From the IMG/VR virus record IMGVR_UViG_3300028569_002417, positions 161,528 through 225,527 of that record: DNA of 64,000 nucleotides, one strand, 5' to 3'. The notes under the pieces were generated by a model that was not told the origin of the DNA, ran no database searches, and saw only the letters and a program-made list of their open reading frames with translations. Numbering within the stretch: position 1 is the stretch's first letter; every line of letters starts with the position of its first letter. The position numbers and the translations under genes were made by a program. Positions 30,293 through 53,210 of this stretch are shown here, piece after piece.

Positions 30293-30321
30293 TTTACAAA
30301 AAAATAAAAGTGTTGTACACT
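30293..30321 (+). promoter_or_regulatory. Sigma70-like promoter of cas12i
   Basis: TTTACA (30293-30298), 17 nt, TACACT (30316-30321); same boxes at 52716-52744. Confidence 0.65.
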
Positions 30322-30362
30322 GCTCAGTAGAAATCCGCCACAAGGGCTACAGGAGCAGTGTC

Positions 30363-33300
30363 ATGGTCAGCGATAGCACTATTCGTCCTTATGCCAGCAA
30401 ATTGGCACCAAATGATCCTAAGCTGAAAATGCTTAACGATACATTCAATTGGCTAGACCATGCATACAAGGTATTCTTTGATGTATCAGTAGCACTTTTT
30501 GGTGCTATTGAACATGAAACTGCTCAAGAATTGATAGGTGAAAAAAGTAAATTCGACGCAGATCTAATCTGTGCTATCATGTGGTTTCGCCTAGAAGAAA
30601 AATCCGATAACCCCGGACCTCTCCAAACAGTAGAACAAAGAATGAGACTGTTCCAGAAATACTCTGGACACGAACCATCTTCTTTCACACAAGAATACAT
30701 CAAAGGAAACATAGATTCAGAAAAATATGAATGGGTAGATTGTCGTCTCAAATTTATAGACTTAGCTAGAAATATTAACACAACCCAAGAATCACTCAAA
30801 ATTGATGCATACACTCTTTTCATGAATAAATTAATTCCTGTAAGCAAAGATGATGAATTCAACGCTTATGGCTTGATTTCACAACTTTTTGGAACAGGAA
30901 AGAAAGAAGACAGATCAATCAAAGCAGCAATGCTTGAAGAAATCTCAAATATTCTCGCAGACAAAAAGCCAGATACTTGGGAAGAATATCATGATTTAAT
31001 TAAAAAAAATTTCAATGTTGATAATTACAAAGAACTTAAAGAAAAATTAAGCGCAGGAAGCAGTGGCCGTGATAGTTCTCTAGTAATTGACCTCAAAGAA
31101 GAAAAAACAGGACTACTTCAACCTAACTTTATCAAAAATCGTATTGTTAAATTCAGAGAAGATGCTGATAAAAAGAAAACTGTATTTTTATTGCCCAATA
31201 GAATGAAATTGAGAGAATTTATTGCTTCACAAATTGGACCATTTGAACAAAATAGCTGGTCAGCTGTTCTAAACAGGTCTATGGCTGCAATTCAATCTAA
31301 AAATAGCAGCAACATTCTATACACTAATGAAAAAGAAGAACGTAATAATGAAATTCAGGAATTGTTAAAAAAAGACATCTTGTCAGCAGCAAGTATATTA
31401 GGCGATTTTCGTCGTGGAGAATTTAACAGATCAGTGGTTTCAAAAAACCACTTGGGAGCAAGACTCAATGAGCTTTTTGAAATATGGCAAGACTTAACAA
31501 TGGATGATGGCATTAGAAAATATGTTGATCTTTGTAAAGATAAGTTTTCCAGAAGACCTGTAAAGGCATTGCTTCAATACATTTATCCATATTTCGATAA
31601 AATTACTGCAAAGCAATTCCTTGATGCAGCTAGTTACAACACACTTGTTGAAACCAATAATCGTAAGAAGATTCATCCAACTGTCACAGGACCAACAGTT
31701 TGTAATTGGGGGCCTAAGTCTACAATTAATGGATCAATAACACCACCAAATCAAATGGTCAAAGGAAGACCAGCAGGATCTCATGGAATGATCTGGGTCA
31801 CAATGACAGTCATAGATAATGGACGTTGGATCAAGCATCACCTTCCATTCTATAACTCACGCTATTATGAAGAACACTATTGCTACAGAGAAGGTCTGCC
31901 TACAAAAAATCAACCTCGTACTAAACAACTTGGAACTCAAGTAGGATCAACAATTTCTGCCACAAGTCTTGCTGCTCTTAAATCTCAAGAAGAGCAAGAC
32001 AGAAGGAATGATCGTAAAAATCGATTCAAAGCCCATAAATCTATCATCAGATCACAAGAGAACATTGAATATAATGTTGCTTTTGATAAGTCAACTAATT
32101 TTGATGTAACACGAAAAAATGGTGAGTTTTTCATCACTATCTCTTCTAGAGTTGCTACTCCAAAATATAGTTATAAATTAAATATTGGCGATATGATCAT
32201 GGGACTGGATAATAACCAAACAGCCCCATGCACATATTCAATTTGGCGTGTAGTGGAAAAAGATACAGAAGGTAGCTTCTTTCATAATAAAATTTGGCTT
32301 CAATTGGTAACTGACGGGAAAATAACAAGCATTGTTGACAATAACCGTCAAGTCGATCAGCTTTCTTATGCTGGCATCGAATACTCCAATTTTGCAGAAT
32401 GGAGAAAAGATCGTCGCCAATTCCTTCGATCAATTAACGAAGATTACGTTAAAAAATCAGATAATTGGCGTAATATGAATCTTTATCAATGGAATGCTGA
32501 ATATTCTCGTTTGCTTCTTGATGTCATGAAAGAAAATAAGGGCAAAAATATTCAAAATACATTCCGTGCAGAAATAGAAGAATTAATTTGTGGTAAGTTC
32601 GGTATAAGATTGGGAAGTCTTTTTCATCATTCACTCCAATTTCTTACTAATTGTAAGAGTCTTATATCATCTTACTTTATGCTTAACAATAAAAAAGAAG
32701 AGTATGATCAAGAGTTGTTTGACAGTGATTTCTTTAGGTTGATGAAAAGTATTGGGGACAAACGTGTTAGGAAACGCAAAGAGAAATCCTCAAGGATTTC
32801 ATCTACAGTATTGCAAATTGCAAGGGAAAATAATATCAAGTCTTTGTGTGTTGAAGGTGATTTACCTACAGCCACAAAGAAGACTAAGCCAAAACAAAAT
32901 CAAAAATCAATAGATTGGTGCGCCCGTGCTGTTGTCAAAAAATTGAATGATGGCTGTAAGGTATTGGGAATTAATTTACAGGCCATTGATCCAAGAGACA
33001 CAAGTCACTTAGATCCATTTGTTTATTATGGAAAGAAATCTACTAAAGTTGGAAAAGAAGCTCGATATACAATTGTTGAGCCATCCAATATAAAGGAATA
33101 CATGACAAATAGATTCGATGACTGGCATCGAGGGGTTACCAAAAAGTCAAAAAAGGGTGATGTTCAAACAAGCACTACTGTTCTTCTTTATCAAGAAGCT
33201 TTAAGGCAATTTGCTAGTCATTACGAACTTGATTTTGACTCTTTGCCAAAAATGAAATTCTATGATTTGGCTAAAAGATTGGGAGATCATGAAAAAGTGA

Positions 33301-33503
33301 TTATCCCTTGTCGTGGAGGAAGAGCTTATCTGTCTACTTATCCAGTGACAAAAGATTCCTCGAAAATAACTTTCAATGGTAGAGAAAGATGGTATAATGA
33401 ATCAGATGTGGTAGCTGCTGTTAACATCGTGCTGAGAGGCATAAGAGATGAAGACGAGCAGCCTGATGATGCCAAAAAACAGGCACTCGCTCGCACAAAG
33501 TAA
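30363..33503 (+). CDS. cas12i: Type V-I CRISPR effector Cas12i (1046 aa)
   Basis: AGGAG RBS then MVSDSTIRPY; LFQKYSGHEPS, FGTGKK, RuvC I IMGLDNN, RuvC II LCVEGDL, DWCARAV, TSHLDPFV, RGGRAYL, RuvC III SDVVAAVNI; adjacent array with AGAAATCCGTC..TTGACGG handle. Confidence 0.93.
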   Translation: MVSDSTIRPYASKLAPNDPKLKMLNDTFNWLDHAYKVFFDVSVALFGAIEHETAQELIGEKSKFDADLICAIMWFRLEEKSDNPGPLQTVEQRMRLFQKYSGHEPSSFTQEYIKGNIDSEKYEWVDCRLKFIDLARNINTTQESLKIDAYTLFMNKLIPVSKDDEFNAYGLISQLFGTGKKEDRSIKAAMLEEISNILADKKPDTWEEYHDLIKKNFNVDNYKELKEKLSAGSSGRDSSLVIDLKEEKTGLLQPNFIKNRIVKFREDADKKKTVFLLPNRMKLREFIASQIGPFEQNSWSAVLNRSMAAIQSKNSSNILYTNEKEERNNEIQELLKKDILSAASILGDFRRGEFNRSVVSKNHLGARLNELFEIWQDLTMDDGIRKYVDLCKDKFSRRPVKALLQYIYPYFDKITAKQFLDAASYNTLVETNNRKKIHPTVTGPTVCNWGPKSTINGSITPPNQMVKGRPAGSHGMIWVTMTVIDNGRWIKHHLPFYNSRYYEEHYCYREGLPTKNQPRTKQLGTQVGSTISATSLAALKSQEEQDRRNDRKNRFKAHKSIIRSQENIEYNVAFDKSTNFDVTRKNGEFFITISSRVATPKYSYKLNIGDMIMGLDNNQTAPCTYSIWRVVEKDTEGSFFHNKIWLQLVTDGKITSIVDNNRQVDQLSYAGIEYSNFAEWRKDRRQFLRSINEDYVKKSDNWRNMNLYQWNAEYSRLLLDVMKENKGKNIQNTFRAEIEELICGKFGIRLGSLFHHSLQFLTNCKSLISSYFMLNNKKEEYDQELFDSDFFRLMKSIGDKRVRKRKEKSSRISSTVLQIARENNIKSLCVEGDLPTATKKTKPKQNQKSIDWCARAVVKKLNDGCKVLGINLQAIDPRDTSHLDPFVYYGKKSTKVGKEARYTIVEPSNIKEYMTNRFDDWHRGVTKKSKKGDVQTSTTVLLYQEALRQFASHYELDFDSLPKMKFYDLAKRLGDHEKVIIPCRGGRAYLSTYPVTKDSSKITFNGRERWYNESDVVAAVNIVLRGIRDEDEQPDDAKKQALARTK

Positions 33504-33630
33504 GTCCTTGTCTTCAAAAGACTTACGAAATTTGCTCTTTGACAAGTAGGTTATTCTCATGTGGGTTAAGCATAACCTCTCGCTAATTGGATCGTAAGTC
33601 CTTACTCAGTATGGTATTGTGGGACAAGCC

Positions 33631-34554
33631 CCCACAATACCTGAGAAATCCGTCCTTCGTTGACGGTGCAATCCATCATGCATAATATAATTTTCATCGC
33701 TTCCCACAATACCTGAGAAATCCGTCCTTCGTTGACGGACCTATTGCTCGCCTGCCAGTGCCTTTCCCAGCGAGTTCCCACAATACCTGAGAAATCCGTC
33801 CTACGTTGACGGCGATGAAAATATACTATGTTATGCAGAAGATTTTATCCCACAATACCTGAGAAATCCGTCCTACGTTGACGGCTATGAGTAATTTTGA
33901 AGCTACAGATAGTTTTCCATACCCACCCACAATACCTGAGAAATCCGTCCTACGTTGACGGTCAAGTAATTCGATGCGTGTTTTATTTGTTTGAACCACC
34001 CACAATACCTGAGAAATCCGTCCTACGTTGACGGCTCCATCGAGACTTGTCGGCCCCACAATACCTGAGAAATCCGTCCTACGTTGACGGCTTGGGCAGT
34101 CCCGAAGGGTCTAACTGCAAAACGCTACCCACAATACCTAAGAAATCCGTCCTACGTTGACGGGGACTAGAGGCGCAGCAGGCTGAAGTTGAAGCTTATG
34201 CCCACAATACCTGAGAAATCCGTCCTCCGTTGACGGCCTGAGCCATGCCGCCAGTTGCTTGGCTTTAGAATTCCCACAATACCTGAGAAATCCGTCCTAC
34301 GTTGACGGGGTTGGAAGAAAAGAAGGGACGATCTTTTTGTTTTGTCCCACAATACCTGAGAAATCCGTCCTACGTTGACGGTGCGATTCAAAAGAGAATG
34401 TTGGGCTTGGCCAGTGGGCCCCACAATACCTGAGAAATCCGTCCTACGTTGATGGGCCGTGTTCTCGATGACGACCCACAATACCTGAGAAATCCGTCCT
34501 GCGTTGACGGAATGAGGTGACCTTCGTAAAGGTAGGCCCACAACACCCAAGAAA
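33631..34554 (+). CRISPR. CRISPR array: 13 full 36-nt repeats, 1 truncated terminal repeat, 13 spacers
   Basis: Consensus CCCACAATACCTGAGAAATCCGTCCTACGTTGACGG starting at 33631, 33703, 33777, 33849, 33926, 33999, 34055, 34128, 34201, 34273, 34346, 34420, 34475; degenerate at 34537. Spacer lengths 36,38,36,41,37,20,37,37,36,37,38,19,26. Confidence 0.98.
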
Positions 34555-34567
34555 GAAGAGGTAAAAG

Positions 34568-35002
34568 ATGTTAAGTCTTGGTCTTTGTGAAGAAGAATCA
34601 TCTTCCGTTGAATTGACTTGCAGTAAAAATTGTTTTGGTATCAAAGGATATCATGGCAGTTGTTGTCGATTGGAAGACAGAGATTTTATAATTGGTCCAA
34701 TTCATGACCCAAAAGAATTTTTAGAAAGATTGAATCGTCATTTTAACCGTGAATTTTCTTGGTCAGATGTTTTTATTGACTATGAAGAAGGTTCTAAAAT
34801 GTTTCCTAACAAATCAACATGGCAAAGCACAACAGCCTATCCTGCTCTGAAAATTGATCTTGATTCTTACGACAAGCGTTGTATATTCTATAATAATCAC
34901 TTAAGGGCCTGTTCAGTTTACGAAATAAGGTCAGTGACGTGTTCACGATTCCAATGCGATCACCTCAAATCAGTTCTGAAGTCGAATGAAGTGAAAGGGT
35001 AG
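34568..35002 (+). CDS. YkgJ-family cysteine-cluster protein
   Basis: CSKNC...SCC, CIFY...CSVYEIRSVTCSRFQC. Confidence 0.75.
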   Translation: MLSLGLCEEESSSVELTCSKNCFGIKGYHGSCCRLEDRDFIIGPIHDPKEFLERLNRHFNREFSWSDVFIDYEEGSKMFPNKSTWQSTTAYPALKIDLDSYDKRCIFYNNHLRACSVYEIRSVTCSRFQCDHLKSVLKSNEVKG

Positions 35003-35042
35003 TCAGATGACTCAAATTTTTACGAAAGGAGGCCAGTCGCAA

Positions 35043-36457
35043 GTGGAGATAGTCGGTTTTGAACATCTTCACTTGCACTAGTTTACTCCGATTTTTCTGT
35101 ATTAGATGGTTTTGGATCTGTAGAAGAGTATTGTGTTCGTGCTCCTCAGATCAATCAAAAGTTTTTAACAATTAGCGATCACGGTATGATGGGAGCAATT
35201 CCACGTCAGATTCGTGGATGTGAAAAAATTAATGACAAGTATGGCAAAGACACTCTTAGCCCCATATTTGCAGTCGAACTGTATATGAATCGTCTTCAGC
35301 CTGAGATGACAGAGCAGGACGAAGGAAAGAAAATATATTCAAGTCTGACAGAAGAAGAGCAAAGCGAATTTAAGTCTAGCAGTCATTTGCTCGCTATTGC
35401 CTACAGCAACGAAGGATATAAGAATCTTGTTCGTCTTTCTAGTTGGGGCTGGACAAAGGGATTTTATCGTCGCCCAAGAGTCAACTACGAACAATTACTG
35501 AAATATAAAGAAGGAATTATTTTCACAAGTTGTTGTTATGCCAGTGAGATTGGAAGAGCATTTGACAAAGGTGGAGAAGAAGCTGGATTCGCTATGGTCG
35601 AGCGTTATGTTGAAATGTTCGGCAAAGAACATTTCTATCTCGAAATAATGCTTTTGGATTTCAAAAAGCAAAAACCATATGATGAATTTATTGTAAAAGC
35701 AAAGGAAAAGTATGGTCTTAAAATCATACTCACAAATGATTGCCATTATTGCAACAAAGAAGATAGTCAATATCAGAGACTTATGTTGATGATGCAGACT
35801 AATCGTACTATTGCCGAAATTGAAAAGGCAATGAAGGAAGATTCAAATCAAGATTTCTTTGAGTTGCAGGATGCGAATCTTTGGATGAAGAGCGAAGAGG
35901 AATTGAATGATAAGTGGTTGAGTGATTATCAAGATTCAATTCCTTATGAGATTTTTTGCGAGGCCAAGAGGACAACTGTTGATATTTGCAAAAAGGCAAA
36001 GGGAGTTCAGCTTGATCGTAGTTTGAAATTACCATTTATTCCCGATGGTGATGAAAAATTGAGGGAAGAAATCATGATTGGTTTCCAAAAAAGGAAGCTC
36101 CCAAAGACAAGGGAATATCTTGATAGAATCAAGGAAGAATACAGTCTTATCATCAGGAAGGGATTTACGAGTTACTTTTTGATTCAAAAGATGATGACAG
36201 ATGAGGCTCGTAGAGTCTGTCGTGATTTGCTTGGATTTGGTGACGGCTCACAGGCTGTTGGTCCCGCTAGAGGCTCAGCAGCAGGTTCACTTATTTGCTA
36301 TTGTCTAGGCATCACTAGTGTCGATCCTGTGCGTGAAGGCTTACTCTTCAGTCGTTTCATGAGTGAAGCTCGTGGAGGAAGAAGCTTGCAGTTAGAATTC
36401 AAGAATATCGATCCTCTTCCACTAGAGGAGTTGGAATTGAGGCAGTCGGGGTTGTGA
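35043..36457 (+). CDS. dnaE: DNA polymerase III alpha, N-terminal PHP part; frame interrupted by 8 nt at 35079-35086
   Basis: AGGAGG + GTG gives MEIVGFEHLHLH, stop; second frame SDFSVLDG..ISDHG..HLLAIA..EGYKNL..TNDCHY..RGSAAGSLICYCLGIT..LLFSRF. Confidence 0.88.
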
Positions 36458-42025: not shown

Positions 42026-43039
42026 ATGATTTGTAAAATATGCAATAAAGAGGTATCAGAAAAATTTTATCGCCATCTAAATAGTAGTCATAAGATGAAA
42101 AAAGGAGATTATCTAAATTTGTTTCCAGAGCAAAAAGAGGAGTACAAAAGTCAAATTTCTGTTTTGTGGAACAAAGGAAAAACCAAGTGCGATGATGATC
42201 GCATCATGGCGATTGCCGATAAGATAAAAAAATTCACAGGACAGGAACACATACGAAAGCAAAGATCGGAAAACATGAAAAAAATGTATCAAAATGGTGA
42301 TATGTTGTCCCCTGAGATGAGAGCTTATGTGCAAAAAAAAGGCACAGATGGATGGGTCAAAAAGGTTAAGGAATCTTCTTTTGAAGAAAGAAAGATATTA
42401 TTAAAGAATTTTTCTGATGCTGGCAACAAAAAAATACAAGAAAATAAAATAAATCGCACGCCTGAAGATTATATGCGAATTTGCAAAAATGCCAAAGGAA
42501 AAGCTCAATATGGTAATTGTGCAGAATGCGGAAATCAAATTGTAATATGGGTTGGAGGCAAGCCACGACCTAAACAAAGATTTTGTAATCAATCATGTCA
42601 AAAAATATATCAAAAAAAACATCCTTTTTATACATTATCTCATGTTGGAAAGCATTATTTTTCAGAAAAAATGCAATGTGAATTTTATCTAAGATCAAAA
42701 TTAGAAATTTGGCTTGCAGAAATGTTAGATGTAAATGAAAAAGTGAATTCTTGGCATATTACACCATTCGCTGTAAGCTACGAGTTTCATGGAAAAAAAC
42801 GATTGTATTACCCAGATTTCATGATAAACTCAAAGTGGGTTGTTGAATTGAAATCTGGTTATATATTTGACATCGATGCCGACAAAAATAGAGCAAAGTT
42901 TATGGCTGCACAAGATTATTCAGAGGAGATAAATTGTGAGTTTTTTTATTGGCAATTTGATAATCACAATATGACAAAAAAGTTATTTGAAAAAGATCAA
43001 AGGGTGATTGATTTCTTTTCATTTTTACAGGAAGCATGA
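42026..43039 (+). CDS. Free-standing putative homing endonuclease (Zn fingers + TnsA-N-like PD-(D/E)XK)
   Basis: CKIC..HL..H, GKTK..D.RI, CAEC..FCNQSC, LRSKLE, YYPDF, VELKS; lies between split-intein halves. Confidence 0.8.
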   Translation: MICKICNKEVSEKFYRHLNSSHKMKKGDYLNLFPEQKEEYKSQISVLWNKGKTKCDDDRIMAIADKIKKFTGQEHIRKQRSENMKKMYQNGDMLSPEMRAYVQKKGTDGWVKKVKESSFEERKILLKNFSDAGNKKIQENKINRTPEDYMRICKNAKGKAQYGNCAECGNQIVIWVGGKPRPKQRFCNQSCQKIYQKKHPFYTLSHVGKHYFSEKMQCEFYLRSKLEIWLAEMLDVNEKVNSWHITPFAVSYEFHGKKRLYYPDFMINSKWVVELKSGYIFDIDADKNRAKFMAAQDYSEEINCEFFYWQFDNHNMTKKLFEKDQRVIDFFSFLQEA

Positions 43040-43040
43040 A

Positions 43041-43172
43041 ATGCTTGATTTTGAAGAAATAGTTCAGATTGAAGAGGTTGGTGAAGATGATTGTTATGAT
43101 ATTATGTTGTTAGAAAAAGACTTGTATTTGGACGAGCCAAATTTTATAGCTAACGATATTGTTGTTCACAAT
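43041..43172 (+). mobile_element. Split intein C-half (44 aa)
   Basis: EIVQIEEVGEDDCYDI...NFIANDIVVHN followed by Cys+1. Confidence 0.9.
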
Positions 43173-45560
43173 TGTGGCATGGACAAGCGTTATGTTGAGC
43201 GTAAGAAGGGTCATGAAAAATATGAAATTCATCATTTAATCAAGCCTATTCTTGAAAAAACATATGGAGTTATGATTTATCAAGAGCAAATCATGCAGAT
43301 ATTGAATGTTGTTGGTGAAATTCCTTTGAAGGATTGTGAAGCTGTAAGAAAAGCTATATCAAAGAAGAAAATAGAATCTATTGAAAAATATAAAGATATG
43401 TTTATTAAGAATGGGCAGAAAAATTTAAGTTTTACAAAAGAACAAATGGAAGAGTTTTTTAATCAAATATTGTCTTGGAGTGAATATGGCTTTAATAAAA
43501 CTTTGACCGAAGACACAATTATAAATTGTGTTGATGGCGCAAAGCAAATAAAAGACATTTGTGCCGGAGACATAGTTTATTCTATAAATGAAAAGGGAGA
43601 ACAGGTACAAACTGAAGTTGCGGCAGTTCATGATCATGGCGTGGTCAATGTTGTGGAGGCGACATTTGATGACGGCTATGTTGTGAGGTGTACTTATGAT
43701 CACAAATTTTTGACTGAAGAAGGACAAGTTCCTCTTTGGTTAATTGTTAAAGACAACATGGTTGTGCTGAGTTCTCCGTTGGGAGAACATGCAGGGGAAG
43801 AAAAAGAATGGTCATCTGGCAAGGTGTGGACAAATAATAAAAACTCTGGAAAAGATGAAAGAGCATCGAGAGAATTGCAAGGAGTGCAACTATCTGAAGT
43901 GGAGGCTGGAGGGAAAGAAATACATTTCCAGATGCGGAGTGGAATTTCTGCGTTCACCTCAACTGGTCCAAAATCATCAGAAAACTGGAGAAATGAATTC
44001 GGAGTGGTTCACTTCACTCCAGAGTATGCTTCTATCACCAATACCCGGAATTTGGTGTCTAGGAGAATATTACGAGTTGTGACCGTGGGTAAAAGACAAT
44101 GTTACGATCTTGAAGTCGCCATCTCAACTCACAACTTTATTCTTCCGAATGGAATAATCACATCGAACTCACATGCTGTGGCTTATACTTACATCAGCAT
44201 GTATCTTTTGTATTTGAAGGTTCATTACCCTCATGAATTTTATGCTAGCATGTTATCATGTGAGACTTTGGCTGAGAAGATAAAAGACATTAAGATGGAG
44301 GCTAAGATACATGGTGTTGAGATGCATCGTCTTGACATTAACAAATCTGGCATTAATTTTGAGCTTAAGGATAATTTAATTTATTTTGGTTTTAGTAATG
44401 TGAAGGGTATAGGAGAGGGTCCTGCTCAAAAGATAGTGGCTGGTCAGCCGTATCGTAGTTTTGAGGATTTCCTTTATCGATGTGGAACAGATGCTTCGAT
44501 GTTGAAGCCGATACTTGGTTTAAGATGTTTTAGGGATCGTGATCCAATTACTTTGTGGAAATTTGCAGAGCATTTCAAAGAATGTTTTAAGAAAAACGAA
44601 GAGAAGCGCAAGCGTTTTGGTACTTCTTTGGAGAGGTACGAAGACGAGTTAAGGGAGCTTATTCCTGAAGTTGAATTCAAATTATCTGATTTGAGTGGTG
44701 ATTCACCATTTGATAACATTGAGTATCAGCAAAAATATGATAAGGAAGAGGAGATTACTGTTCTCAAGGAGTATGAGTGTAAGGAAGGGGATGGTGTTGG
44801 AAGGATTGAGATGGTATATGTTCCTGTTGATGGGACTGATGTTGTGATTGAGCGTGAGGTGATGAGATATTACAAGAAGATTGCTACTAAGAGGCCTTGG
44901 AACAGGTGGAAGGATCTTAAGAATCTTTGGAATAAAAGAAAGAGAACTATAGCGAGATTTTCTGATGCTGATTTCAAGACATTGCCAAGATTGATTGATT
45001 TCGATCCAGACCAATATGATATACCTAAGGATTTGGCTAAGGAGTTTAAGAATCCGGTTGTTTCAGAAGAAAAGTTTTATGGATTTGCTTGGATTCATGA
45101 GCTTGAGAGAAGTCCTGATTATAGAGGGAATTTGACATTTGATTCTTTGAGAAGTGACATTGACAGTTCTTCTGGTCCTGTTGAGTTGAGGGTTAAGAAA
45201 GTAATTCAGATGACTAGTAAAAAGGGTTCTACTTATTCTCAGGTATTGGCGGAAGATGTTACTGGTCAAGAGAATAAGATTAATGTTTGGTCTGATGACT
45301 GGGATCGTTGGCATAAAGAATTAAGTGAAGGTAACTTAATTAGGATAAGATTGCAACCTCCTTCTGGTGGTTTCAATACATTCTTGTTGGAATCAAATCA
45401 GAATGGCAAGTATAGAGGTCAGAAGAGATATCGAGACAAGGATGATGATCCTCGTGTTATTGTCATGAGAGTTGGCTTAAAAGAAGAAGAGAAATTCATG
45501 ACAGATGAAGAGGTTTTGGAACTTTTTAATAATTTAGGTATGGAAAATAAAAATGACTGA
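43041..45560 (+). CDS. dnaE: DnaE C-terminal part, starting with C-intein and containing a cis intein
   Basis: ILEKTYGVMIYQEQIMQ, YGFNK..SHAVAY, YLKVHYP, DINKS, VKGIG, OB-fold end. Confidence 0.92.
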   Translation: MLDFEEIVQIEEVGEDDCYDIMLLEKDLYLDEPNFIANDIVVHNCGMDKRYVERKKGHEKYEIHHLIKPILEKTYGVMIYQEQIMQILNVVGEIPLKDCEAVRKAISKKKIESIEKYKDMFIKNGQKNLSFTKEQMEEFFNQILSWSEYGFNKTLTEDTIINCVDGAKQIKDICAGDIVYSINEKGEQVQTEVAAVHDHGVVNVVEATFDDGYVVRCTYDHKFLTEEGQVPLWLIVKDNMVVLSSPLGEHAGEEKEWSSGKVWTNNKNSGKDERASRELQGVQLSEVEAGGKEIHFQMRSGISAFTSTGPKSSENWRNEFGVVHFTPEYASITNTRNLVSRRILRVVTVGKRQCYDLEVAISTHNFILPNGIITSNSHAVAYTYISMYLLYLKVHYPHEFYASMLSCETLAEKIKDIKMEAKIHGVEMHRLDINKSGINFELKDNLIYFGFSNVKGIGEGPAQKIVAGQPYRSFEDFLYRCGTDASMLKPILGLRCFRDRDPITLWKFAEHFKECFKKNEEKRKRFGTSLERYEDELRELIPEVEFKLSDLSGDSPFDNIEYQQKYDKEEEITVLKEYECKEGDGVGRIEMVYVPVDGTDVVIEREVMRYYKKIATKRPWNRWKDLKNLWNKRKRTIARFSDADFKTLPRLIDFDPDQYDIPKDLAKEFKNPVVSEEKFYGFAWIHELERSPDYRGNLTFDSLRSDIDSSSGPVELRVKKVIQMTSKKGSTYSQVLAEDVTGQENKINVWSDDWDRWHKELSEGNLIRIRLQPPSGGFNTFLLESNQNGKYRGQKRYRDKDDDPRVIVMRVGLKEEEKFMTDEEVLELFNNLGMENKND
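43500..44168 (+). mobile_element. Cis intein (223 aa) at YGFNK|SH, begins with Thr
   Basis: TLTEDT, CTYDHKFLT, CYDLEV..HNFILPNGIITSN|S. Confidence 0.88.
43789..44082 (+). CDS. Overprinted alternative-frame ORF inside the intein (Cys/His-rich)
   Basis: GGGAG RBS + ATG; spans the intein linker and ends just inside the C-terminal splicing region. Confidence 0.45.
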   Translation: MQGKKKNGHLARCGQIIKTLEKMKEHRENCKECNYLKWRLEGKKYISRCGVEFLRSPQLVQNHQKTGEMNSEWFTSLQSMLLSPIPGIWCLGEYYEL

Positions 45561-47308: not shown

Positions 47309-47364
47309 CTTTGATTTAATGTTATGTCCCCCTTAGAATTTTATAAGTTCTAAGGGGTATTTTT

Positions 47365-48316: not shown

Positions 48317-48328
48317 CTCTTGTAAGTT

Positions 48329-48517
48329 ATGGAAAAGAACTTCATGGTTAGGTGTCACAAGTGCAGATGGGCGAGGTTATCAACAGGTTTATCCTCTGAT
48401 CTTGCCGATTTGAAGGAAATTATTTCTTGTCCAACTTGTGGCAAGGCTAGACAATTTAAGTGTCCAAAGTGTGGTCTTGTGGCTAAGTTGACTAGAGTCA
48501 AGAGAACTGATGGATGA
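48329..48517 (+). CDS. Small zinc-ribbon protein
   Basis: Three CxxC pairs. Confidence 0.6.
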   Translation: MEKNFMVRCHKCRWARLSTGLSSDLADLKEIISCPTCGKARQFKCPKCGLVAKLTRVKRTDG

Positions 48518-49686
48518 AATTAATTAGTTTTTGTCGGCGCAATCCCGGCAATGGTAAGTTGCTATCCAAAGAAGTATTAATTCCTTCTTTGAAATTTACT
48601 GTATTCAAATTCAATAAAAGACCTAAGCCAGAGAATGTTAAAAGAATACTGATAATTAGTTGTTTTTCTGAGTTTGGTTGTGAAACAATTGGTTTGATGT
48701 ATTGTATTCCCAAGATCATTTCGAGTAATCCCGGTGCTTATGTAATTTGTGTTGGTTGGTATGGGAGAGAATATCTTTACAGGCATCTTGTTGATGAGTT
48801 TTGGGAAATTGAAGAAAACGTCATGAATTTGCGTGAATATTCAAATGCTTTTTATAATTCTTCTTTTAATATTCGTCGTCTTGAAAAGTGTCTTGAAAAT
48901 TATGGTGTAGTTTTCAAGTGTGCCAATATGGGACAATTATGTGTCAATAATACTTGTGAAATTTGTAAAAAAGTTTGGGCTTCTGACAATGTTTCCACTG
49001 GATGTCCTTCTTGTTATTCTCAAAAAATAAAAAAAGGTTATCTTGCCGATGTTGCTTATCATCGTAAGTTTGCTGTACAGATTCCAAGACCATCTATGAA
49101 AGTTCAGAATAAAGCTAAAGATTATTTGAAGCCAAATTCTGTTGGTATTTTTGCAAGAGGCAGGACGATGTATGGTCGTAATCTATCTCCAGAATTTTAT
49201 ATAAAGCTTATAAAATGTTTGGAGGAAAAGGGTTACAATCCTATATGGCTGGGTGAAAAGCAGAGTGTCATTCCTTGTCCTGTTGATCACATCATTGATT
49301 TTAGTCGTCTTCCTGAATCAAGGGATTTGGAACTTACTTTGGCGATTATATCAAATTTGCAATTTACTGTTCAGTTTTGGACAGCTTCTACGAGGCTGGC
49401 TGGAATGATGGGTGTTCCTTGGATATTATTTGAAAGTCCTGATCAAATAGCGGGTAATGGGCAAGAGGGCAAGAGGATTGTTCTTACGACTGATTACAAC
49501 AAGAAAAAATTAATTTTGGCTCATTATTTTAATGTTGTTGAAGATCATGAAAAAGCATTGAAAATCTTGGATCAGGCTATAGACGAAATGAATGAAGACA
49601 ATTGGGAAGATATGCTGGGTTTGATAGAAGATGCTGGCATAGTTAACGATATGCTTAAAAAACAACTTGAATGGAGGTCGATGTGA
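48514..49686 (+). CDS. GT9-like (GT-B) glycosyltransferase with Zn-ribbon insert
   Basis: RILII..EFG, RNLSPEFY, IWLGE, TASTRLAGMMGVP. Confidence 0.55.
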   Translation: MKLISFCRRNPGNGKLLSKEVLIPSLKFTVFKFNKRPKPENVKRILIISCFSEFGCETIGLMYCIPKIISSNPGAYVICVGWYGREYLYRHLVDEFWEIEENVMNLREYSNAFYNSSFNIRRLEKCLENYGVVFKCANMGQLCVNNTCEICKKVWASDNVSTGCPSCYSQKIKKGYLADVAYHRKFAVQIPRPSMKVQNKAKDYLKPNSVGIFARGRTMYGRNLSPEFYIKLIKCLEEKGYNPIWLGEKQSVIPCPVDHIIDFSRLPESRDLELTLAIISNLQFTVQFWTASTRLAGMMGVPWILFESPDQIAGNGQEGKRIVLTTDYNKKKLILAHYFNVVEDHEKALKILDQAIDEMNEDNWEDMLGLIEDAGIVNDMLKKQLEWRSM

Positions 49687-50825
49687 GTTCGGTTGCTGAT
49701 TTTTTACGCAGGGCAGCGGAGCGTAATGGTTTCCATAGAGATCGTTATGAAGAGAAGAGGATTCCAACTGACTTCACGAATGTTTGCATTTTGCCTTTTT
49801 TTGGTGATTTGAGAAGCATGACGATTTTGTCAAGTTATATTCTGCATCGATATCGTGATGAGTCAAGAGGTTCAAAATATTTTATAGTTGCTTCATGGCC
49901 CGGATTTCAGGGTTTGTTTCCATATGCTGATGAGTATTGGTCTTTGACTGATGATTCGATTATGAAGAGGTTTTACGATCATTCTGAGGGAATGCGTAAT
50001 AGTTCTGATTTGAATGTTTCGTACATGAGGAATATGAATGAGTTTTTCAGGGATGTGATTGATGCGGTTGAGATTCAGAAGTATTATCGGAATGGATTTA
50101 CTAATTACTTTTTTGATAAATTTCAGGACACGAAAAGATTTTTACCTTTTATTCCGAGTTCATCAATTATTGGTAAGGAATTCAATAGAAGTTTGATAAC
50201 GAAGCCGGGTTATAAGGTATTTTTACATCCATCTATTTATTGTAGGTTTTGGCATAATGGTATAAGCGACCACATGAAGGTCAAGAAAGAATTTTATATT
50301 GATTTGGTTAATTTCTTGTCCAATAAGGATGTTACTTGTGTTTTGTGGCAAAATGCATTTTCTTATGATCTTGCTGATTCTCTTGAAGAAAAGTGTGTGT
50401 TTTTGAGAGAGCAGGACGTAACAAAGGCTTTGGCAGCGATGCGTGCTTGTGGTTGTGTTCTTGACACGTTCAATGGTTTGTCGAGGTTGTCTTTGCTGGC
50501 AAGAACTCCCTTTTTGTCTATTGATGAAAGGTCGAGGTTTTCAGGAACGAAGGAATTCGAGATTGATCATTTGAGTGGCAATCAAATTCCGTATCAGTAT
50601 ATTTTTTCATTTTCTACTATCATAACTGATGGCGATGCTGGTTTGTGGAAGAGTGATATTTTTCCAAGTATTTATCGAAAGCTTGAGGAATTTTTACCTA
50701 GCCTAAACCGTGATGAATGGCCTTCTACTGCGGAGAGTATTGAAAATTTACCTTATGAAGATTTTGTGCAACCGCAGAAAAAAAAGAAACTTGGCACAAG
50801 ATTTATCAAGGTAGCAAAAGAATAA
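49683..50825 (+). CDS. GT9-like (GT-B) glycosyltransferase
   Basis: FFGDL, PYADEYW, VFLHP, NGLSRLSLLARTP. Confidence 0.5.
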   Translation: MSSVADFLRRAAERNGFHRDRYEEKRIPTDFTNVCILPFFGDLRSMTILSSYILHRYRDESRGSKYFIVASWPGFQGLFPYADEYWSLTDDSIMKRFYDHSEGMRNSSDLNVSYMRNMNEFFRDVIDAVEIQKYYRNGFTNYFFDKFQDTKRFLPFIPSSSIIGKEFNRSLITKPGYKVFLHPSIYCRFWHNGISDHMKVKKEFYIDLVNFLSNKDVTCVLWQNAFSYDLADSLEEKCVFLREQDVTKALAAMRACGCVLDTFNGLSRLSLLARTPFLSIDERSRFSGTKEFEIDHLSGNQIPYQYIFSFSTIITDGDAGLWKSDIFPSIYRKLEEFLPSLNRDEWPSTAESIENLPYEDFVQPQKKKKLGTRFIKVAKE

Positions 50826-50835
50826 GGAATAAAGT

Positions 50836-51123
50836 ATGGCTTGTAAAGTTGAATTGCGTGATCTTCCTATGAATCCAAGTTGGTATGAAAAGGAGATTGC
50901 ATTCAAAAAAATGTTTACTGCTTTCAAAAAGCAGGTTGCGGAAGCTGGTATTCTGCATGATTTTAAGAAGAGAGAGTACTATGAGACTCCCGGTCAAATT
51001 CGTCGCCGTAAGAGTCGTGAGGCGGAAAATGTGCGTTTGAAGGAAAAGCTGCGTGAGAATTTCCCAGAAAGACGTAAGCCGAAGAAGTCTGATAACAAGA
51101 AAACAAAAGCCAAGGGTGAATAA
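50836..51123 (+). CDS. rpsU: Ribosomal protein bS21-like
   Basis: FKKQVAEAGILHDFKKREYYETPGQIRRRK. Confidence 0.85.
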   Translation: MACKVELRDLPMNPSWYEKEIAFKKMFTAFKKQVAEAGILHDFKKREYYETPGQIRRRKSREAENVRLKEKLRENFPERRKPKKSDNKKTKAKGE

Positions 51124-51386
51124 TGCCATCTAAAAAAGGTACGATCATGAGCCTGAATGTTGATCCCAGCATTCAGGAAAAGATGAAGGCAGTTGCCAAG
51201 AGGCGAAACATTAGTGTTTCCAAGCTTGTTCGTGATTTGGTTGACAATAATCTTCCAGATGCTGACGAGGAAGTAGATGTTGTGATCTTTAAGATTCCAA
51301 CTGCCATGAGGACAACTCCTGATTCTCTTAAGCAATGGCTGCAAAATCGTATTGATGCTGTAGTAAGGGCTTTGACAACATCATGA
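51123..51386 (+). CDS. Ribbon-helix-helix DNA-binding protein
   Basis: MSLNVDPSIQEKMKAVAKRRNISVSKLVRDLV. Confidence 0.7.
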   Translation: MPSKKGTIMSLNVDPSIQEKMKAVAKRRNISVSKLVRDLVDNNLPDADEEVDVVIFKIPTAMRTTPDSLKQWLQNRIDAVVRALTTS

Positions 51387-51877
51387 AATTCAAAGAACCT
51401 CTGAAAATTGTTCCAGTTGCTGATATCCCTAAGGCAAAAGATGTTCCTCTTGAAAGCCTTATGGATATATTCCGTCTTTGCACAAAGATGGAAAAAATTT
51501 GCGATGAAAATGATGGAATAGGTTTATCAGCAGTTCAAGTTGGAGTTCCATGGAATCTTTTCATTGTTAAGCGCAATCGTCATTTTGAATATTATGTCAA
51601 TTGCGAGTATACAGGCCATGGAGACAAGATAAAGTCAGTTGAGGGCTGCTTGTCTCTTAGGAATGAGGATGGCACTTTTAGAAGGTTTGAGGTTGAGAGA
51701 TTTTCTAAGACACGAATAAAAGGCAAGCAACTTGTTGTTTCAGGGATGCCTTCTCTTGTTTTGAATGATGTTGATCGTGAAGAGATTAATCTTTTCAGTA
51801 TTGTTTTTCAGCATGAATGCGATCACAGTCGAGATGTACTCGTTTCGCAAATAGGTCGTGAGGTGGAATTGGCCTAA
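51383..51877 (+). CDS. def: Peptide deformylase
   Basis: GIGLSAVQVG, EGCLS, QHECDH. Confidence 0.92.
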   Translation: MKFKEPLKIVPVADIPKAKDVPLESLMDIFRLCTKMEKICDENDGIGLSAVQVGVPWNLFIVKRNRHFEYYVNCEYTGHGDKIKSVEGCLSLRNEDGTFRRFEVERFSKTRIKGKQLVVSGMPSLVLNDVDREEINLFSIVFQHECDHSRDVLVSQIGREVELA

Positions 51878-51903
51878 GAAATCCGTCTTCCGTTAAAGGA
51901 CGG
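51873..51903 (+). repeat. Solitary degenerate Cas12i repeat
   Basis: CCTAAGAAATCCGTC-TTCCGTTAAAG-GACGG; first 15 nt identical to part of array repeat 8; CCGTC/GACGG stem intact. Confidence 0.7.
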
Positions 51904-51920
51904 AGCTAAGGGAATGAATT

Positions 51921-52199
51921 ATGTTAAGTCTCAAACAATTAGAAGATGTGTGTCTGAATTCAGATGCGACTTCTCAAAAATGTCGATATATTTGTCAAGA
52001 TGAAGTTGACAAAAATAAGTTTTACTGCTTAAAACTTTCTGCTAAAGCTAGCAAAATAGATAATGAAATTGAAAATTATATCAAAGTAATTAGCTTAAAA
52101 GGCAGAGATCCTTCTGATGAAAATTTACCATTAGGGGACAATTGTTCTGGTTATCCTTTTCTTAGGCATATCGAACAAGGTTACGACAAGAAAAATTAG
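51921..52199 (+). CDS. Hypothetical Cys-containing protein
   Basis: AAGGGA RBS; 92 aa. Confidence 0.6.
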   Translation: MLSLKQLEDVCLNSDATSQKCRYICQDEVDKNKFYCLKLSAKASKIDNEIENYIKVISLKGRDPSDENLPLGDNCSGYPFLRHIEQGYDKKN

Positions 52200-52696
52200 A
52201 GACTTTCTAGTCTCTCTCTGATTATCTGGTAGATATCCTTTCCTTTGTTTTCTTCAACAGCAGAGGAAAGGATATTTGCTTCTAGCTCATTACTGTTAAA
52301 TCTTGCTATCTCTCTTACCATTAGTTCGTTCGTCTTTTCGCTGCTTATAGCTCTGTTTCGATAGTAGAACAATAGCATTGCTATGACAACTAATGCGAAG
52401 ATGAAGATTAGTGCTCCATCGCCTTGGATTATTTGAACTCCTGTGTTTTCGTTTCGTGAAATTGCGCCGTTTATGTTGACTAGGCCGCTTTGTATTTCTT
52501 TCAGAAGACTATTTTGGGCTGATAGATCTTGCCTAGTCTTCATGAGTTCGGCCATTACCCCATTTTGGTTTGTGCGTATATCCTCTATTTTACCATTTTG
52601 ATTTTGTATTTTGGGGTTGTTTCTTGGGTTGAAGTTTGCACATCCTACCAAGTTTAACAAGGTTGCGGCTGCAATAATCAACAAAAATTTGTACAT
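52196..52696 (-). CDS. Putative lipoprotein with second TM helix
   Basis: GGAGG RBS; MYKFLLII..LVGC lipobox. Confidence 0.6.
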   Translation of the reverse strand: MYKFLLIIAAATLLNLVGCANFNPRNNPKIQNQNGKIEDIRTNQNGVMAELMKTRQDLSAQNSLLKEIQSGLVNINGAISRNENTGVQIIQGDGALIFIFALVVIAMLLFYYRNRAISSEKTNELMVREIARFNSNELEANILSSAVEENKGKDIYQIIRERLESL

Positions 52697-52715
52697 ACAT
52701 CCTCCACAATATGTA

Positions 52716-52744
52716 TTTACAAGTGGGGAATTTCTTTGTACACT
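52716..52744 (+). promoter_or_regulatory. Sigma70-like promoter, same boxes as cas12i promoter
   Basis: TTTACA (52716-52721), 17 nt, TACACT (52739-52744). Confidence 0.65.
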
Positions 52745-52747
52745 ATG

Positions 52748-52773
52748 CTGAGAAATCCGTTTCATGTTGACGG
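52748..52773 (+). repeat. Solitary Cas12i repeat handle (crRNA-like leader)
   Basis: CTGAGAAATCCGTTTCATGTTGACGG vs array CTGAGAAATCCGTCCTACGTTGACGG: 22/26 identical, same length, stem kept by a U-G pair. Confidence 0.85.
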
Positions 52774-52799
52774 ATGATCAACCCGCTGGAGGATTTGGC

Positions 52800-53210
52800 G
52801 TGGCTCAAGGCAAGGATGTTTTTTTCTTTGGTGATGAATTTGATGATGAAAATTCATCAAGTGAAAGCGCACAGATTGCAAATGAATTTAAGCAGAATGC
52901 TAATTCATTAGTTGTACATCATTTGTCAAATTACTTCAAGGACAAGATGTTGCACACAGGAGGAAATGTTCCTGATCAATTACTAAATAGTCATAAAAGA
53001 ATATCTATGGTTTTGAACTACACTGTTTCTAATGGTGTAGATCATGCTCATGAAAGACTAGAATTTTCTGAGGGGAGAAACAATGATGATGAGAATTCAG
53101 AGCTTATCGTCACTGTTCTTCATGGAATAGCCAAAAGTGGTGTTCCGAAGGAATTTGCTGGTGGTATGCTTTGTCTGCACTTGGAATTAATAGAAGGGAT
53201 AGATTTTTGA
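52800..53210 (+). CDS. Hypothetical acidic protein
   Basis: GGAGGA 52788-52793 then GTG (MAQGKDVFFFG). Confidence 0.6.
   Translation: MAQGKDVFFFGDEFDDENSSSESAQIANEFKQNANSLVVHHLSNYFKDKMLHTGGNVPDQLLNSHKRISMVLNYTVSNGVDHAHERLEFSEGRNNDDENSELIVTVLHGIAKSGVPKEFAGGMLCLHLELIEGIDF

What the first reader, a model, noticed from the sequence alone, without database searches (positions are those of the whole stretch)
30293..52802. Candidate Cas12i regulon: CRISPR-repeat handles placed in front of ribosome-binding sites
Seen: repeat-like sequence occurs immediately upstream of an RBS and start codon at four places: cas12i leader (AGAAATCCG 30329, RBS 30351, ATG 30363), the array's truncated last repeat (34537, ATG 34568), after def (51873-51903, ATG 51921) and 52748-52773 (RBS 52788, GTG 52800). 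Two sit at the predicted +1 of identical TTTACA-N17-TACACT promoters. Known: Cas12i binds and processes its own repeat hairpin without tracrRNA and holds the downstream ~20+ nt as guide. Inference: Cas12i could load on these mRNA leaders, bury the RBS or cut polycistrons, and so act as an RNA-level regulator of phage genes and of itself. This differs from CreR/CreA, tracr-L and Racr RNAs, where the repeat-like RNA acts in trans.
Basis: partly seen in the sequence, partly recalled or inferred. Interest (0 to 1): 0.92.

Follow-up and report, generated by a model that had tools for sequence, protein, structure and literature searches.

The report
Solitary Cas12i repeat handles at transcript starts
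A huge phage that carries its own Cas12i CRISPR system has also scattered single copies of the crRNA "handle" through its genome, nearly all exactly at the start of a transcript, so Cas12i probably binds these RNAs; whether that controls the genes behind them is plausible but unproven.

Summary
The sequence facts hold at the stated coordinates, but the four sites are unequal. SRU-A (52751-52773) and SRU-B (51877-51903) are strong copies of the 23-nt mature Cas12i crRNA handle. The cas12i-leader match is a decayed relic (9 nt, no hairpin). The fourth site is just the array's degenerate last repeat.

Three or four more solitary units lie 60-70 kb away in the same phage. Five of six non-array handles begin 6-7 nt after the -10 box of a sigma70-like promoter (background 0.7% of positions), so these transcripts are born with the handle as their 5' end.

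The units are recent insertions. SRU-B, C, D and E are absent from the same sites in relatives, and SRU-A is degenerate at 81% identity and absent further out, including in a relative that has cas12i. Three units are not in front of any ribosome-binding site.

So there is no conserved regulon. This is a lineage-specific family of promoter-fused solitary repeat units matching the phage's own Cas12i. Cas12i loading is the likeliest mechanism. Cis repression of translation fits SRU-A, SRU-B and the intact leader hairpins of two array-less relatives, but is untested.

Verdict: new variant of a known kind (SRU/crRNA-like RNAs).

The parts
30239..30261 (-). Candidate trans target of the SRU-A guide: TTC PAM plus 9-nt seed ATGATCAAC, 33 bp upstream of the -35 box of the cas12i promoter. 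A lead only.
   Evidence: It is the only TTN-flanked seed match of 9 nt or more in 78.6 kb. About 1.1 such hits are expected anywhere and 0.003 in a 200-bp zone at this promoter (post hoc).
30293..30321 (+). sigma70-like promoter of cas12i, TTTACA-N17-TACACT
   Evidence: A terminator of the upstream gene lies at 30259-30288.
30329..30351 (+). Decayed handle in the cas12i leader: AGAAATCCGCCACA, with the 3' arm lost
   Evidence: no model hit; aligns with the intact hairpin L012:9967-9986.
30363..33503 (+). cas12i (1046 aa)
   Evidence: Best PDB match is Cas12i2, E 1e-101. K20, H492/H493 and D616 align with the Cas12i2 RNase and RuvC residues.
33631..34572 (+). CRISPR array: 13 full 36-nt repeats, 13 spacers and a degenerate 14th repeat (34537-34572) that overlaps the SD and ATG of gene 34568
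51383..51877 (+). def (peptide deformylase). Its stop codon TAA (51875-51877) is supplied by the SRU-B insertion.
51872..51903 (+). SRU-B: a 32-nt insertion holding the handle AGAAATCCGTC...GACGG (51877-51903; 7-bp stem variant). It is followed by SD AAGGGA (51908-51913) and ATG 51921.
   Evidence: Model hit 29.5 bits, fold, and absence in L020, L021, L024 and L025. The left flank ends in TTG.
51921..52199 (+). 92-aa Cys-rich gene downstream of SRU-B
   Evidence: It is conserved in relatives.
52716..52744 (+). Promoter TTTACA-N17-TACACT driving SRU-A and the gene at 52800
   Evidence: The -35 box and spacing are conserved in L020-L023.
52751..52773 (+). SRU-A: a 23-nt handle (19 of 23 identical to the array repeat; 22 of 26 counting 3 nt upstream; stem kept through a G-U pair) at the predicted +1
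   Evidence: 37.8 bits. It is identical in a 98% strain from another project.
52788..53210 (+). SD GGAGG (52788-52792), GTG start at 52800 and a 136-aa conserved gene of unknown function
   Evidence: GCTGGAGGATTnGGCGTG is invariant in 8 relatives.

Best explanation
The window is part of a huge-phage genome with its own type V-I system: cas12i plus a 13-spacer array.

Besides the array, the phage carries a family of solitary repeat units (SRUs). These are single copies of the 23-nt piece of the repeat that stays on the mature crRNA, made of the AGAAAU tail plus a hairpin. Two strong units lie in the window (SRU-B, SRU-A). Three lie 60-70 kb downstream (SRU-C, D, E). A decayed one lies in the cas12i leader.

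Five of the six begin 6-7 nt after the -10 box of different sigma70-like promoters. The RNA is therefore made with the handle already at its 5' end and needs no processing. SRU-B lies inside the def operon and would need Cas12i to cut it out.

The most likely mechanism is that the phage's Cas12i loads these RNAs like crRNAs and holds the adjacent 20-30 nt as a pseudo-guide. The consequences would differ by type of unit:
- In leader-type units (SRU-A, SRU-B, and the intact cas12i-leader hairpins of relatives L012 and L028), that stretch contains the SD and the start codon. Cas12i occupancy would lower translation and stabilise the 5' end.
- A cut at SRU-B falls inside the def stop codon (UA|A).
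- Stand-alone units (SRU-C, D, E) give small crRNA-like RNAs.

The family is young and lineage-specific, not a conserved regulon.

Shown: the sequences, hairpins, promoters, insertion status, and conserved RNase and RuvC residues. Inferred: transcription starts, Cas12i binding and processing, and any effect on expression.
For: - Handle identity and hairpins.
- The conserved part starts exactly at A(-23), the Cas12i2 processing site. The tail residues that matter for Cas12i2 are kept (PMC7567891).
- Stems are kept through G-U pairs (SRU-A, SRU-D) and a double change CCGCC/GGCGG (SRU-E).
- Promoter at +1 in 5 of 6 units, against 0.74% of background positions (P about 1e-10). As a control, 1 of 49 chance matches to the same motif in bacterial genomes has one.
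- The promoters differ in sequence, so the common feature is the handle at +1, not a copied cassette.
- RNase triad and RuvC residues are conserved.
- No bacterial array with this repeat exists in 185,579 species genomes, so the phage's own Cas12i is the obvious partner.
- Leader hairpins sit directly before the SD of cas12i in the array-less relatives L012 and L028.
- Engineered precedent: dCas12a stays on the cut 5' end of a repeat-bearing 5' UTR, raises mRNA level and modestly lowers expression (PMC12191184).
Against: - There is no expression or binding data.
- The promoters are consensus matches only.
- SRU-B and SRU-E have longer stems than the canonical handle, and it is unknown whether Cas12i accepts them.
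- In the Cas12i2 binary complex most of the spacer is disordered (PMC7567891), so the SD may not be fully hidden.
- The units are not conserved in relatives, including one with cas12i. That fits selfish or neutral insertions as well as young regulators.
- SD proximity is partly automatic for a unit that lands at a short 5' UTR or between abutting genes.
Confidence: 0.45

Rival explanations
1. Trans-acting crRNA-like regulators of the CreR/crlRNA type. Each SRU RNA guides Cas12i to a PAM-flanked, partly complementary DNA site, which it binds without cutting, to repress a promoter in the phage or the host. SRU-A would feed back on cas12i.
For: - SRU-C and SRU-D look like stand-alone small-RNA genes: promoter, handle, short unstructured seed, then a hairpin or T-run.
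- The SRU-A seed ATGATCAAC with a TTC PAM lies 33 bp upstream of the -35 box of the cas12i promoter. Nine PAM-proximal base pairs is the threshold used for viral Cracr RNAs.
- Cas12i2 needs a 14-nt duplex to activate RuvC, so short matches would bind without cutting.
Against: - No TTN-flanked seed match of 9 nt or more was found for SRU-B, C, D or E in 78.6 kb of the phage.
- One 9-nt hit among five seeds is the chance expectation (1.09).
- The hit lies upstream of a terminator, not on the promoter.
- No degenerate second repeat is present.
- The units lie 19-60 kb from cas12i, unlike CreR.
- Host genome targets could not be searched.
Confidence: 0.15
2. Decoys of the Racr type. The SRU RNAs soak up Cas12i, either the phage's own (to time or limit its activity) or that of a competing phage with the same repeat. 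The sequence behind the handle has no guide role.
For: - Solitary repeat units in viral genomes are the defining form of Racr RNAs (PMC10651486).
- The units have their own promoters.
- The downstream sequences are varied and unconserved.
- Cas12i relatives with an almost identical handle exist in other phages (L014, L018, L019) and could be rivals.
Against: - The phage itself depends on a Cas12i with exactly this handle, so decoys would blunt its own system.
- No host array with this repeat was found.
- A decoy role does not explain placement directly in front of SD sequences.
Confidence: 0.15
3. Selfish mini-elements with TnpB/omega-RNA-like logic. An SRU sits between a TTN PAM and the sequence it guides against. 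Cas12i loaded with SRU RNA would then cut the SRU-less allele of a co-infecting relative, and repair would copy the SRU (homing or exclusion).
For: - Both insertions whose borders can be read sit right after TTN and end exactly at the handle's 3' end. SRU-B reads GGAATTG | insert | AGCTAAGGG. SRU-C reads CTCCTTT(G) | insert | TATGATTAG.
- All units are presence/absence polymorphic between relatives.
- The nearest SRU-B-less allele (L020) differs at the PAM (CTG) and at seed positions 3 and 9, but not in the next 19 nt.
- RuvC is intact.
Against: - Only two junctions can be read, TTN is common in AT-rich DNA (about 0.1 each), and the borders are slightly ambiguous.
- Short direct repeats flank the inserts (CTAAG; TATGATTGA/TATGATTAG), which homing by recombination does not predict.
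- No transposase was seen.
- SRU-D and SRU-E lie in larger replaced regions.
- This reading does not by itself explain placement at +1.
Confidence: 0.08
4. Neutral debris or generic hairpins. The units are repeat fragments copied by illegitimate recombination from the array, tolerated in intergenic DNA. Some would serve at most as weak terminators on the opposite strand.
For: - The insertions are flanked by microhomology to the handle (CTAAG-AAAT versus CTAAG-GGAAT).
- The units are lineage-specific.
- The reverse complement of SRU-C scores as terminator-like at the 3' end of the minus-strand mscL gene.
- The cas12i-leader copy is visibly decaying.
Against: - Debris would not land at +1 of five different promoters.
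- Debris would not keep the single-stranded AGAAAU tail and keep stems through compensatory changes.
- All copies are on one strand.
- SRU-A is identical in samples from different projects.
Confidence: 0.12

Closest known systems
Solitary repeat units / RNA anti-CRISPRs (Racr) of phages (PMC10651486)
   Same: Single CRISPR-repeat mimics outside arrays in a viral genome, with the hairpin kept and their own promoters.
   Different: Racrs mimic the host's repeats and poison the host's Cas proteins. Here the units match the phage's own Cas12i array, no host array with this repeat was found, and two units lie in mRNA leaders.
CreR/CreA and other crRNA-like regulatory RNAs; viral Cracr RNAs (10.1101/2023.03.10.532045; 10.1101/2024.10.29.618823)
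   Same: A degenerate repeat that keeps the 5' handle, transcribed on its own and loaded by the cognate effector. The regulatory logic senses free Cas protein.
   Different: Those act in trans on DNA through a pseudo-spacer that matches a PAM-flanked site in a cas or toxin promoter, and they sit inside the cas locus or target a host locus. Here no convincing target was found, there is no second pseudo-repeat, and the units are scattered 19-60 kb from cas12i.
Stand-alone repeat-like sequences upstream of cas12a in about 49% of V-A loci (10.1101/2023.03.03.530964)
   Same: A single repeat-like unit directly upstream of a type V effector gene. The leader hairpins of L012, L028 and the relic at 30329 are of this kind.
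   Different: This is subtype V-I in phages. The unit lies between the promoter and the SD of the effector mRNA, 1-10 nt before the SD. It is intact only in the orthologues that lack an adjacent array.
Engineered direct-repeat control of mRNAs (DREDGE; PMC12191184, PMC11988398)
   Same: A Cas12 repeat placed in a UTR lets the effector's RNase cut the mRNA and stay on it, changing expression.
   Different: It is synthetic and eukaryotic. My searches found no natural example.
IS200/IS605 TnpB with omega-RNA (recalled from memory, not checked here)
   Same: The geometry matches: an RNA scaffold at the element's end, the guide formed by the flanking DNA, and the PAM/TAM on the other flank, so the empty site is the target.
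   Different: There is no transposase, the element is only 32-89 nt, short direct repeats flank it, and only two junctions support the geometry.

Membership tests
Type V-I (Cas12i) CRISPR-Cas locus | Cas12i effector homologue with RuvC and pre-crRNA-processing residues | tested here: met
   Cas12i2 is the best PDB match, E 1e-101. K20, H492/H493 and D616 align with Cas12i2 K18, H485/H486 and the RuvC Asp.
Type V-I (Cas12i) CRISPR-Cas locus | Adjacent array whose repeat ends in a 23-nt handle (6-nt tail plus stem-loop), co-oriented with the effector | tested here: met
   There are 13 repeats ending in AGAAATCCGTCCTACGTTGACGG. Handle architecture follows PMC7567891.
Solitary repeat unit (SRU) | A single repeat-like sequence outside any array, with the repeat's hairpin kept | tested here: met
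   SRU-A 37.8 bits and SRU-B 29.5 bits. SRU-C 35.5, SRU-D 30.8 and SRU-E 17.8 bits.
Racr (RNA anti-CRISPR) | Mimics the repeat of a host CRISPR-Cas system that the virus must evade | tested here: not met
   The repeat is that of the phage's own array. All 49 matches in 185,579 species genomes are single, chance-like hits, with no array.
Racr (RNA anti-CRISPR) | Inhibits the cognate effector by forming aberrant complexes | not testable with these tools
   Needs interference assays.
CreR / crlRNA | Pseudo-repeat keeps the nucleotides that form the mature 5' handle | tested here: met
   AGAAAT (GGAAAT in SRU-E) plus the stem are kept in all units.
CreR / crlRNA | Pseudo-spacer partly complementary (9 or more PAM-proximal nt) to a PAM-flanked site in or next to the regulated promoter | tested here: inconclusive
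   There is one hit: the SRU-A seed (9 nt) plus TTC at 30239-30261, 33 bp upstream of the -35 box of the cas12i promoter. Overall expectation is 1.09 hits, and 0.003 in that zone. The other units have none. Host DNA was not searched.
CreR / crlRNA | Encoded inside the cas locus, as a mini-array with a degenerate second repeat | tested here: not met
   The units lie 19-60 kb from cas12i, and no second pseudo-repeat was seen.
Cis-acting translational operator (autogenous-control type) | Protein-binding RNA motif overlapping or abutting the SD and start codon | tested here: met
   After the handle, the SD starts at +15 (SRU-A), +5 (SRU-B), +2 (L012) and about +10 (L028). Start codons lie 15 to 27 nt after the handle.
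Cis-acting translational operator (autogenous-control type) | Operator conserved in orthologous leaders | tested here: not met
   SRU-B is absent in all relatives. SRU-A is degenerate in L020-L023 and absent in L024-L026. The leader hairpin is decayed in the window and L013/L014 and absent in L018.
Cis-acting translational operator (autogenous-control type) | Binding represses translation | not testable with these tools
   Needs reporters or toeprinting.
TnpB/omega-RNA-like homing geometry | PAM/TAM immediately 5' of the element, and the guide equal to the 3' flank, so the empty site is a target | tested here: inconclusive
   TTG lies before SRU-B and TTT/TTG before SRU-C. That is only two junctions, with a chance of about 0.1 each.
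TnpB/omega-RNA-like homing geometry | Associated transposase or another means of mobility | not tested
   None was noticed in the 78.6 kb examined. The full genome is not available.

The most novel reading that the evidence does not exclude
The solitary repeats are minimal selfish elements that use the phage's Cas12i the way IS605 elements use TnpB. Each sits between a TTN PAM and the sequence it guides against, so its RNA directs Cas12i to cut (or block) the repeat-less allele in a co-infecting relative. Recombinational repair then spreads the repeat and the linked genes. A CRISPR repeat alone would then act as a homing element.
Probability: 0.08. Interest if true: 0.95.

Novelty: new variant of a known kind. 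Interest (0 to 1): 0.66.

Why it matters
Solitary repeats in phages have so far been read as weapons against the host's CRISPR system. Repeat-like regulators (CreR, CreA, tracr-L) act in trans on DNA inside the cas locus.

Here a phage that owns a Cas12i has fused copies of its own crRNA handle to the first nucleotide of several unrelated transcripts, including two mRNA leaders. If Cas12i binds them, this would be the first natural case of a type V effector wired to RNAs outside its array. It could act as a post-transcriptional regulator, a source of born-mature guides, or the engine of a selfish element.

The system is also easy to test. It needs one protein, 23-nt RNA motifs, and defined reporters in E. 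coli.

Tried and rejected
- **Self-targets.** All 13 spacers and the pseudo-guides were scanned against the window and L011. Nothing convincing turned up beyond the 9-nt SRU-A seed.
- **GenBank phages.** No relative was found by protein or by DNA.
- **IMG/VR.** Cas12i searches returned only the same phage twice. The repeat pattern found this phage, one extra array contig (L006) and a GC-rich chance match (L008).
- **The L028-type leader hairpin as a possible repeat.** The search gave only chance or terminator hits and no array.
- **GTDB genomes.** No array carries this repeat. I therefore rejected a host-directed Racr reading as the main explanation.
- **External targets.** The SRU-D pseudo-guide and spacer 2 found no target in IMG/VR.
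- **A copied promoter-plus-stem-loop cassette** (as in T4-type PeSL elements, from memory). Rejected because the promoters differ in sequence and only the handle is shared.
- **Paralogy of genes 34568 and 51921,** which share their first 11 nt. Rejected.
- **Array differences between the two sampled contigs.** None; the spacers are identical.
- **Not resolved.** Whether the L020 phage carries cas12i could not be settled, because the contig is too short.

Full report
**Context.** The window matches IMG/VR contig 3300028569_002417 (225.5 kb). A twin contig from a second sample is identical across cas12i, the array spacers and the solitary units. Several features mark it as a huge-phage genome: a SpoVR-like gene with an intein, a split DNA polymerase III alpha, a tmRNA, def, and in syntenic relatives S21, IF3, DnaJ and ClpX. 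The ORF at 30363-33503 is a Cas12i. Its best solved relative is Cas12i2 (E 1e-101). The pre-crRNA-processing residues (K20, H492, H493, matching Cas12i2 K18, H485, H486) and the first RuvC aspartate (D616) are conserved. Phage-borne type V-I systems are already known (PMC7162821). The array (33631-34572) has 13 full 36-nt repeats and a degenerate 14th. The repeat ends in AGAAATCCGTCCTACGTTGACGG. This is the 23-nt handle that Cas12i2 leaves on mature crRNA. It consists of a 6-nt tail plus a stem-loop, is cut 5' of A(-23), and has A(-23), G(-22) and A(-21) as the critical bases (PMC7567891).

**Checking the observation.** Every coordinate in the finding is correct. The four sites carry different weight.
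- *SRU-A (52751-52773)* matches the handle at 19 of 23 positions (22 of 26 counting the 3 nt upstream) and keeps the stem through a G-U pair.
- *SRU-B (51877-51903)* is the handle with one substitution and a 4-nt loop insertion, which gives a 7-bp stem.
- *Model test.* A covariance model built from array repeats and other units scores SRU-A at 37.8 bits and the unseen SRU-B at 29.5 bits. Nothing else in the window outside the array scores better than E 0.37.
- *The cas12i-leader site* is only the 9-mer plus CCACA. It has lost the 3' arm and does not fold. It aligns base for base with an intact hairpin in relative L012 and with a more decayed version in the 91% relatives L013/L014. It is a relic.
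- *The site at 34537* is the usual degenerate terminal repeat, which happens to abut the next gene.

Searching the repeat pattern and scanning the same phage outside the window (locus L011, 60-70 kb downstream of cas12i) turned up more units:
- SRU-C at L011:4605-4627.
- SRU-D at L011:13859-13881.
- SRU-E at L011:9142-9176, with a 12-bp stem whose base carries the compensatory pair change CCGCC/GGCGG (fold z = -4.2).
- A weak candidate inside an ORF at L011:9603-9628.

All are on the cas12i strand. Similarity to the repeat begins exactly at A(-23) in every unit.

**The main pattern is handles at +1.** Five of the six non-array handles lie 6-7 nt after the -10 box of a sigma70-like promoter:

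| Unit | -35, spacer, -10 |
|---|---|
| cas12i relic | TTTACA-N17-TACACT |
| SRU-A | TTTACA-N17-TACACT |
| SRU-C | TTGATT-N17-TATGAT |
| SRU-D | CTGACC-N16-TATAGT |
| SRU-E | TTGACC-N17-TATCAT |

Only 0.74% of positions in this DNA satisfy the same test, giving P of about 1e-10 for 5 of 6. As a control, the same handle-plus-hairpin motif has 49 single matches across 185,579 bacterial and archaeal species genomes. None is in an array and only one has such a promoter. The promoters differ in sequence. What recurs is therefore the handle at the first transcribed base, not a copied cassette. For SRU-A the promoter is ancestral, since relatives share the -35 box and spacing. These RNAs would be born with the mature crRNA 5' end.

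**Two classes of unit.**
- *Leader-type.* After SRU-A, the SD lies at +15 and the GTG start 27 nt after the handle, leading into a conserved 136-aa gene. SRU-B lies between def and a 92-aa gene, with the SD at +5 and the ATG 18 nt after the handle.
- *Stand-alone.* SRU-C and SRU-D are small transcription units set between convergent genes, running antisense to the 3' end of an mscL homologue and into a terminator-rich spacer. SRU-E is followed by (GGAGGGC) repeats and only 3-4-codon ORFs.

So "in front of ribosome-binding sites" describes only part of the family.

**Evolution.** Relatives of the def region are syntenic: L020-L023 (81% identity for the 136-aa protein, Def 95%), L024 (49%, Def 69%) and L025/L026 (41%).
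- *SRU-B* is a clean 32-nt insertion absent from all of them. It ends exactly at the handle's 3' end, supplies the def stop codon, and follows TTG.
- *SRU-A* is identical in a 98% strain from another project. In L020-L023 it is degenerate and lies 13 nt after a TATAAT box (16.4 bits). In L024-L026 it is unrecognisable, although the SD and GTG behind it are invariant.
- *SRU-C* is part of an 89-nt insertion flanked by TATGATTGA/TATGATTAG. SRU-D and SRU-E lie in stretches of about 240 nt and 180 nt that are absent from or replaced in relatives with 77-79% identical ClpX.
- *Relatives.* The model finds no solitary unit in about 113 kb of related phage DNA, apart from the L020 remnant and the L012 leader.
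- *A relative with cas12i.* The L024 phage does carry a Cas12i at the syntenic position (38% identity), without an array beside it.

It is a young, lineage-specific family.

**The cas12i leader across orthologues.** Three array-bearing lineages have a decayed hairpin or none: the window, L013/L014 and L018/L019. The two array-less orthologues have intact ones. L012 has AATCCGTC-ACACTAT-GACGG 1 nt before the SD. L028 has a variant, GGAAAAUCCUGUAU-UUUUAU-AUACAGG, about 10 nt before the SD. With five lineages this is only a hint. It is, however, where cis autoregulation of cas12i is most credible, and it parallels the solitary repeats upstream of cas12a in about half of V-A loci.

**Mechanism.** The simplest reading is that the phage's own Cas12i binds these RNAs.
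- *Cis effects (inferred).* In leader-type units the SD and start codon lie within the roughly 30 nt that Cas12i holds as guide. Occupancy could therefore lower translation and protect the 5' end. This is what dCas12a does on an engineered repeat-bearing 5' UTR (PMC12191184).
- *SRU-B cut (inferred).* The Cas12i2 cleavage rule puts the cut at 51876|51877, inside the def stop codon (UA|A). That would leave a non-stop def mRNA in a phage that encodes a tmRNA.
- *Trans (CreR-like) reading.* There is one lead. The SRU-A seed ATGATCAAC with a TTC PAM lies at 30239-30261, 33 bp upstream of the -35 box of the cas12i promoter. Nine PAM-proximal pairs is the threshold used for viral Cracr RNAs. One such hit among five seeds is the chance expectation (1.09), and only its position is unusual (0.003, post hoc). 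It sits before a terminator rather than on the promoter.
- *Decoy reading.* This is weakened because the handle is the phage's own and no host array exists in the genome collection.
- *Homing reading.* This is modelled on TnpB and omega-RNA. Both readable junctions place the unit right after TTN, so the unit-less allele would restore PAM plus protospacer. It rests on two junctions only.

**Verdict.**
- *Observation:* partly confirmed.
- *Interpretation:* partly supported. A Cas12i-linked RNA feature is very likely, and cis control is plausible for SRU-A, SRU-B and the array-less orthologues. But there is no conserved regulon, cas12i self-control in this phage is doubtful, and nothing shows binding.
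- *Novelty:* a new variant of the solitary-repeat / crRNA-like RNA theme. The units belong to the phage's own effector, are promoter-fused at +1, and are partly embedded in mRNA leaders.

Noticed in passing
window:38973-39327 (+): A tmRNA gene (Rfam RF00023, 100 bits) that ARAGORN did not report. It is relevant if SRU-B processing creates a non-stop def mRNA.
   Followed up: no
window:33613-33641: The CRISPR leader carries an inverted copy (GGTATTGTGGG) of the 5' part of the first repeat (CCCACAATACC). In L014 both sides change together (GGTATTGTAG / CTACAATACC), and in L018 the copy is partly kept. This may be a leader-to-first-repeat hairpin of unknown role.
   Followed up: partly
window:33667-34474 (spacers 1, 3, 6, 12): Spacers 1 and 3 are related to each other in reverse orientation. 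So are the two unusually short spacers 6 (20 nt) and 12 (19 nt). This suggests pairs aimed at both strands of one target region, which could matter for a nick-prone Cas12i.
   Followed up: no
L012:10001-13081 and L028:2166-5188: Two Cas12i orthologues (44% and 38% identity) at the syntenic position have no CRISPR array beside them. A terminator and the next gene follow directly. Both have an intact handle-like hairpin in their leader.
   Followed up: partly
window:34568-34578 and 51921-51931: The gene after the array and the gene after SRU-B begin with the same 11 nt, ATGTTAAGTCT (MLSL), although the proteins are unrelated. This may be a recombination scar.
   Followed up: partly
window:26309-29107: The SpoVR-like gene is interrupted by a LAGLIDADG intein. 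The L028 orthologue has two inteins, and L012 has one at a different position.
   Followed up: no
window:35186-36457 and 43008-45560: DNA polymerase III alpha is split into a PHP-domain gene and a separate body about 6.5 kb away, as in relatives L027/L028.
   Followed up: no
L011:9169-9195: SRU-E is followed by three or four tandem GGAGGGC units and two 3-4-codon ORFs. It replaces a metallophosphatase gene that is present in relatives L087/L088.
   Followed up: no
L011:4566-5039 (-): The phage mscL homologue has a 22-aa C-terminal extension relative to L088. The extension is created by the 89-nt SRU-C insertion, and SRU-C RNA would be antisense to it.
   Followed up: partly
L020:5983-6013: The 81% relatives carry a diverged unit, GATAAATCGTCC...GGACGG, at the SRU-A position, with a possible CGTCC/GGACG stem and a 13-nt loop. 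It is unknown whether that phage has a Cas12i with a matching repeat.
   Followed up: partly
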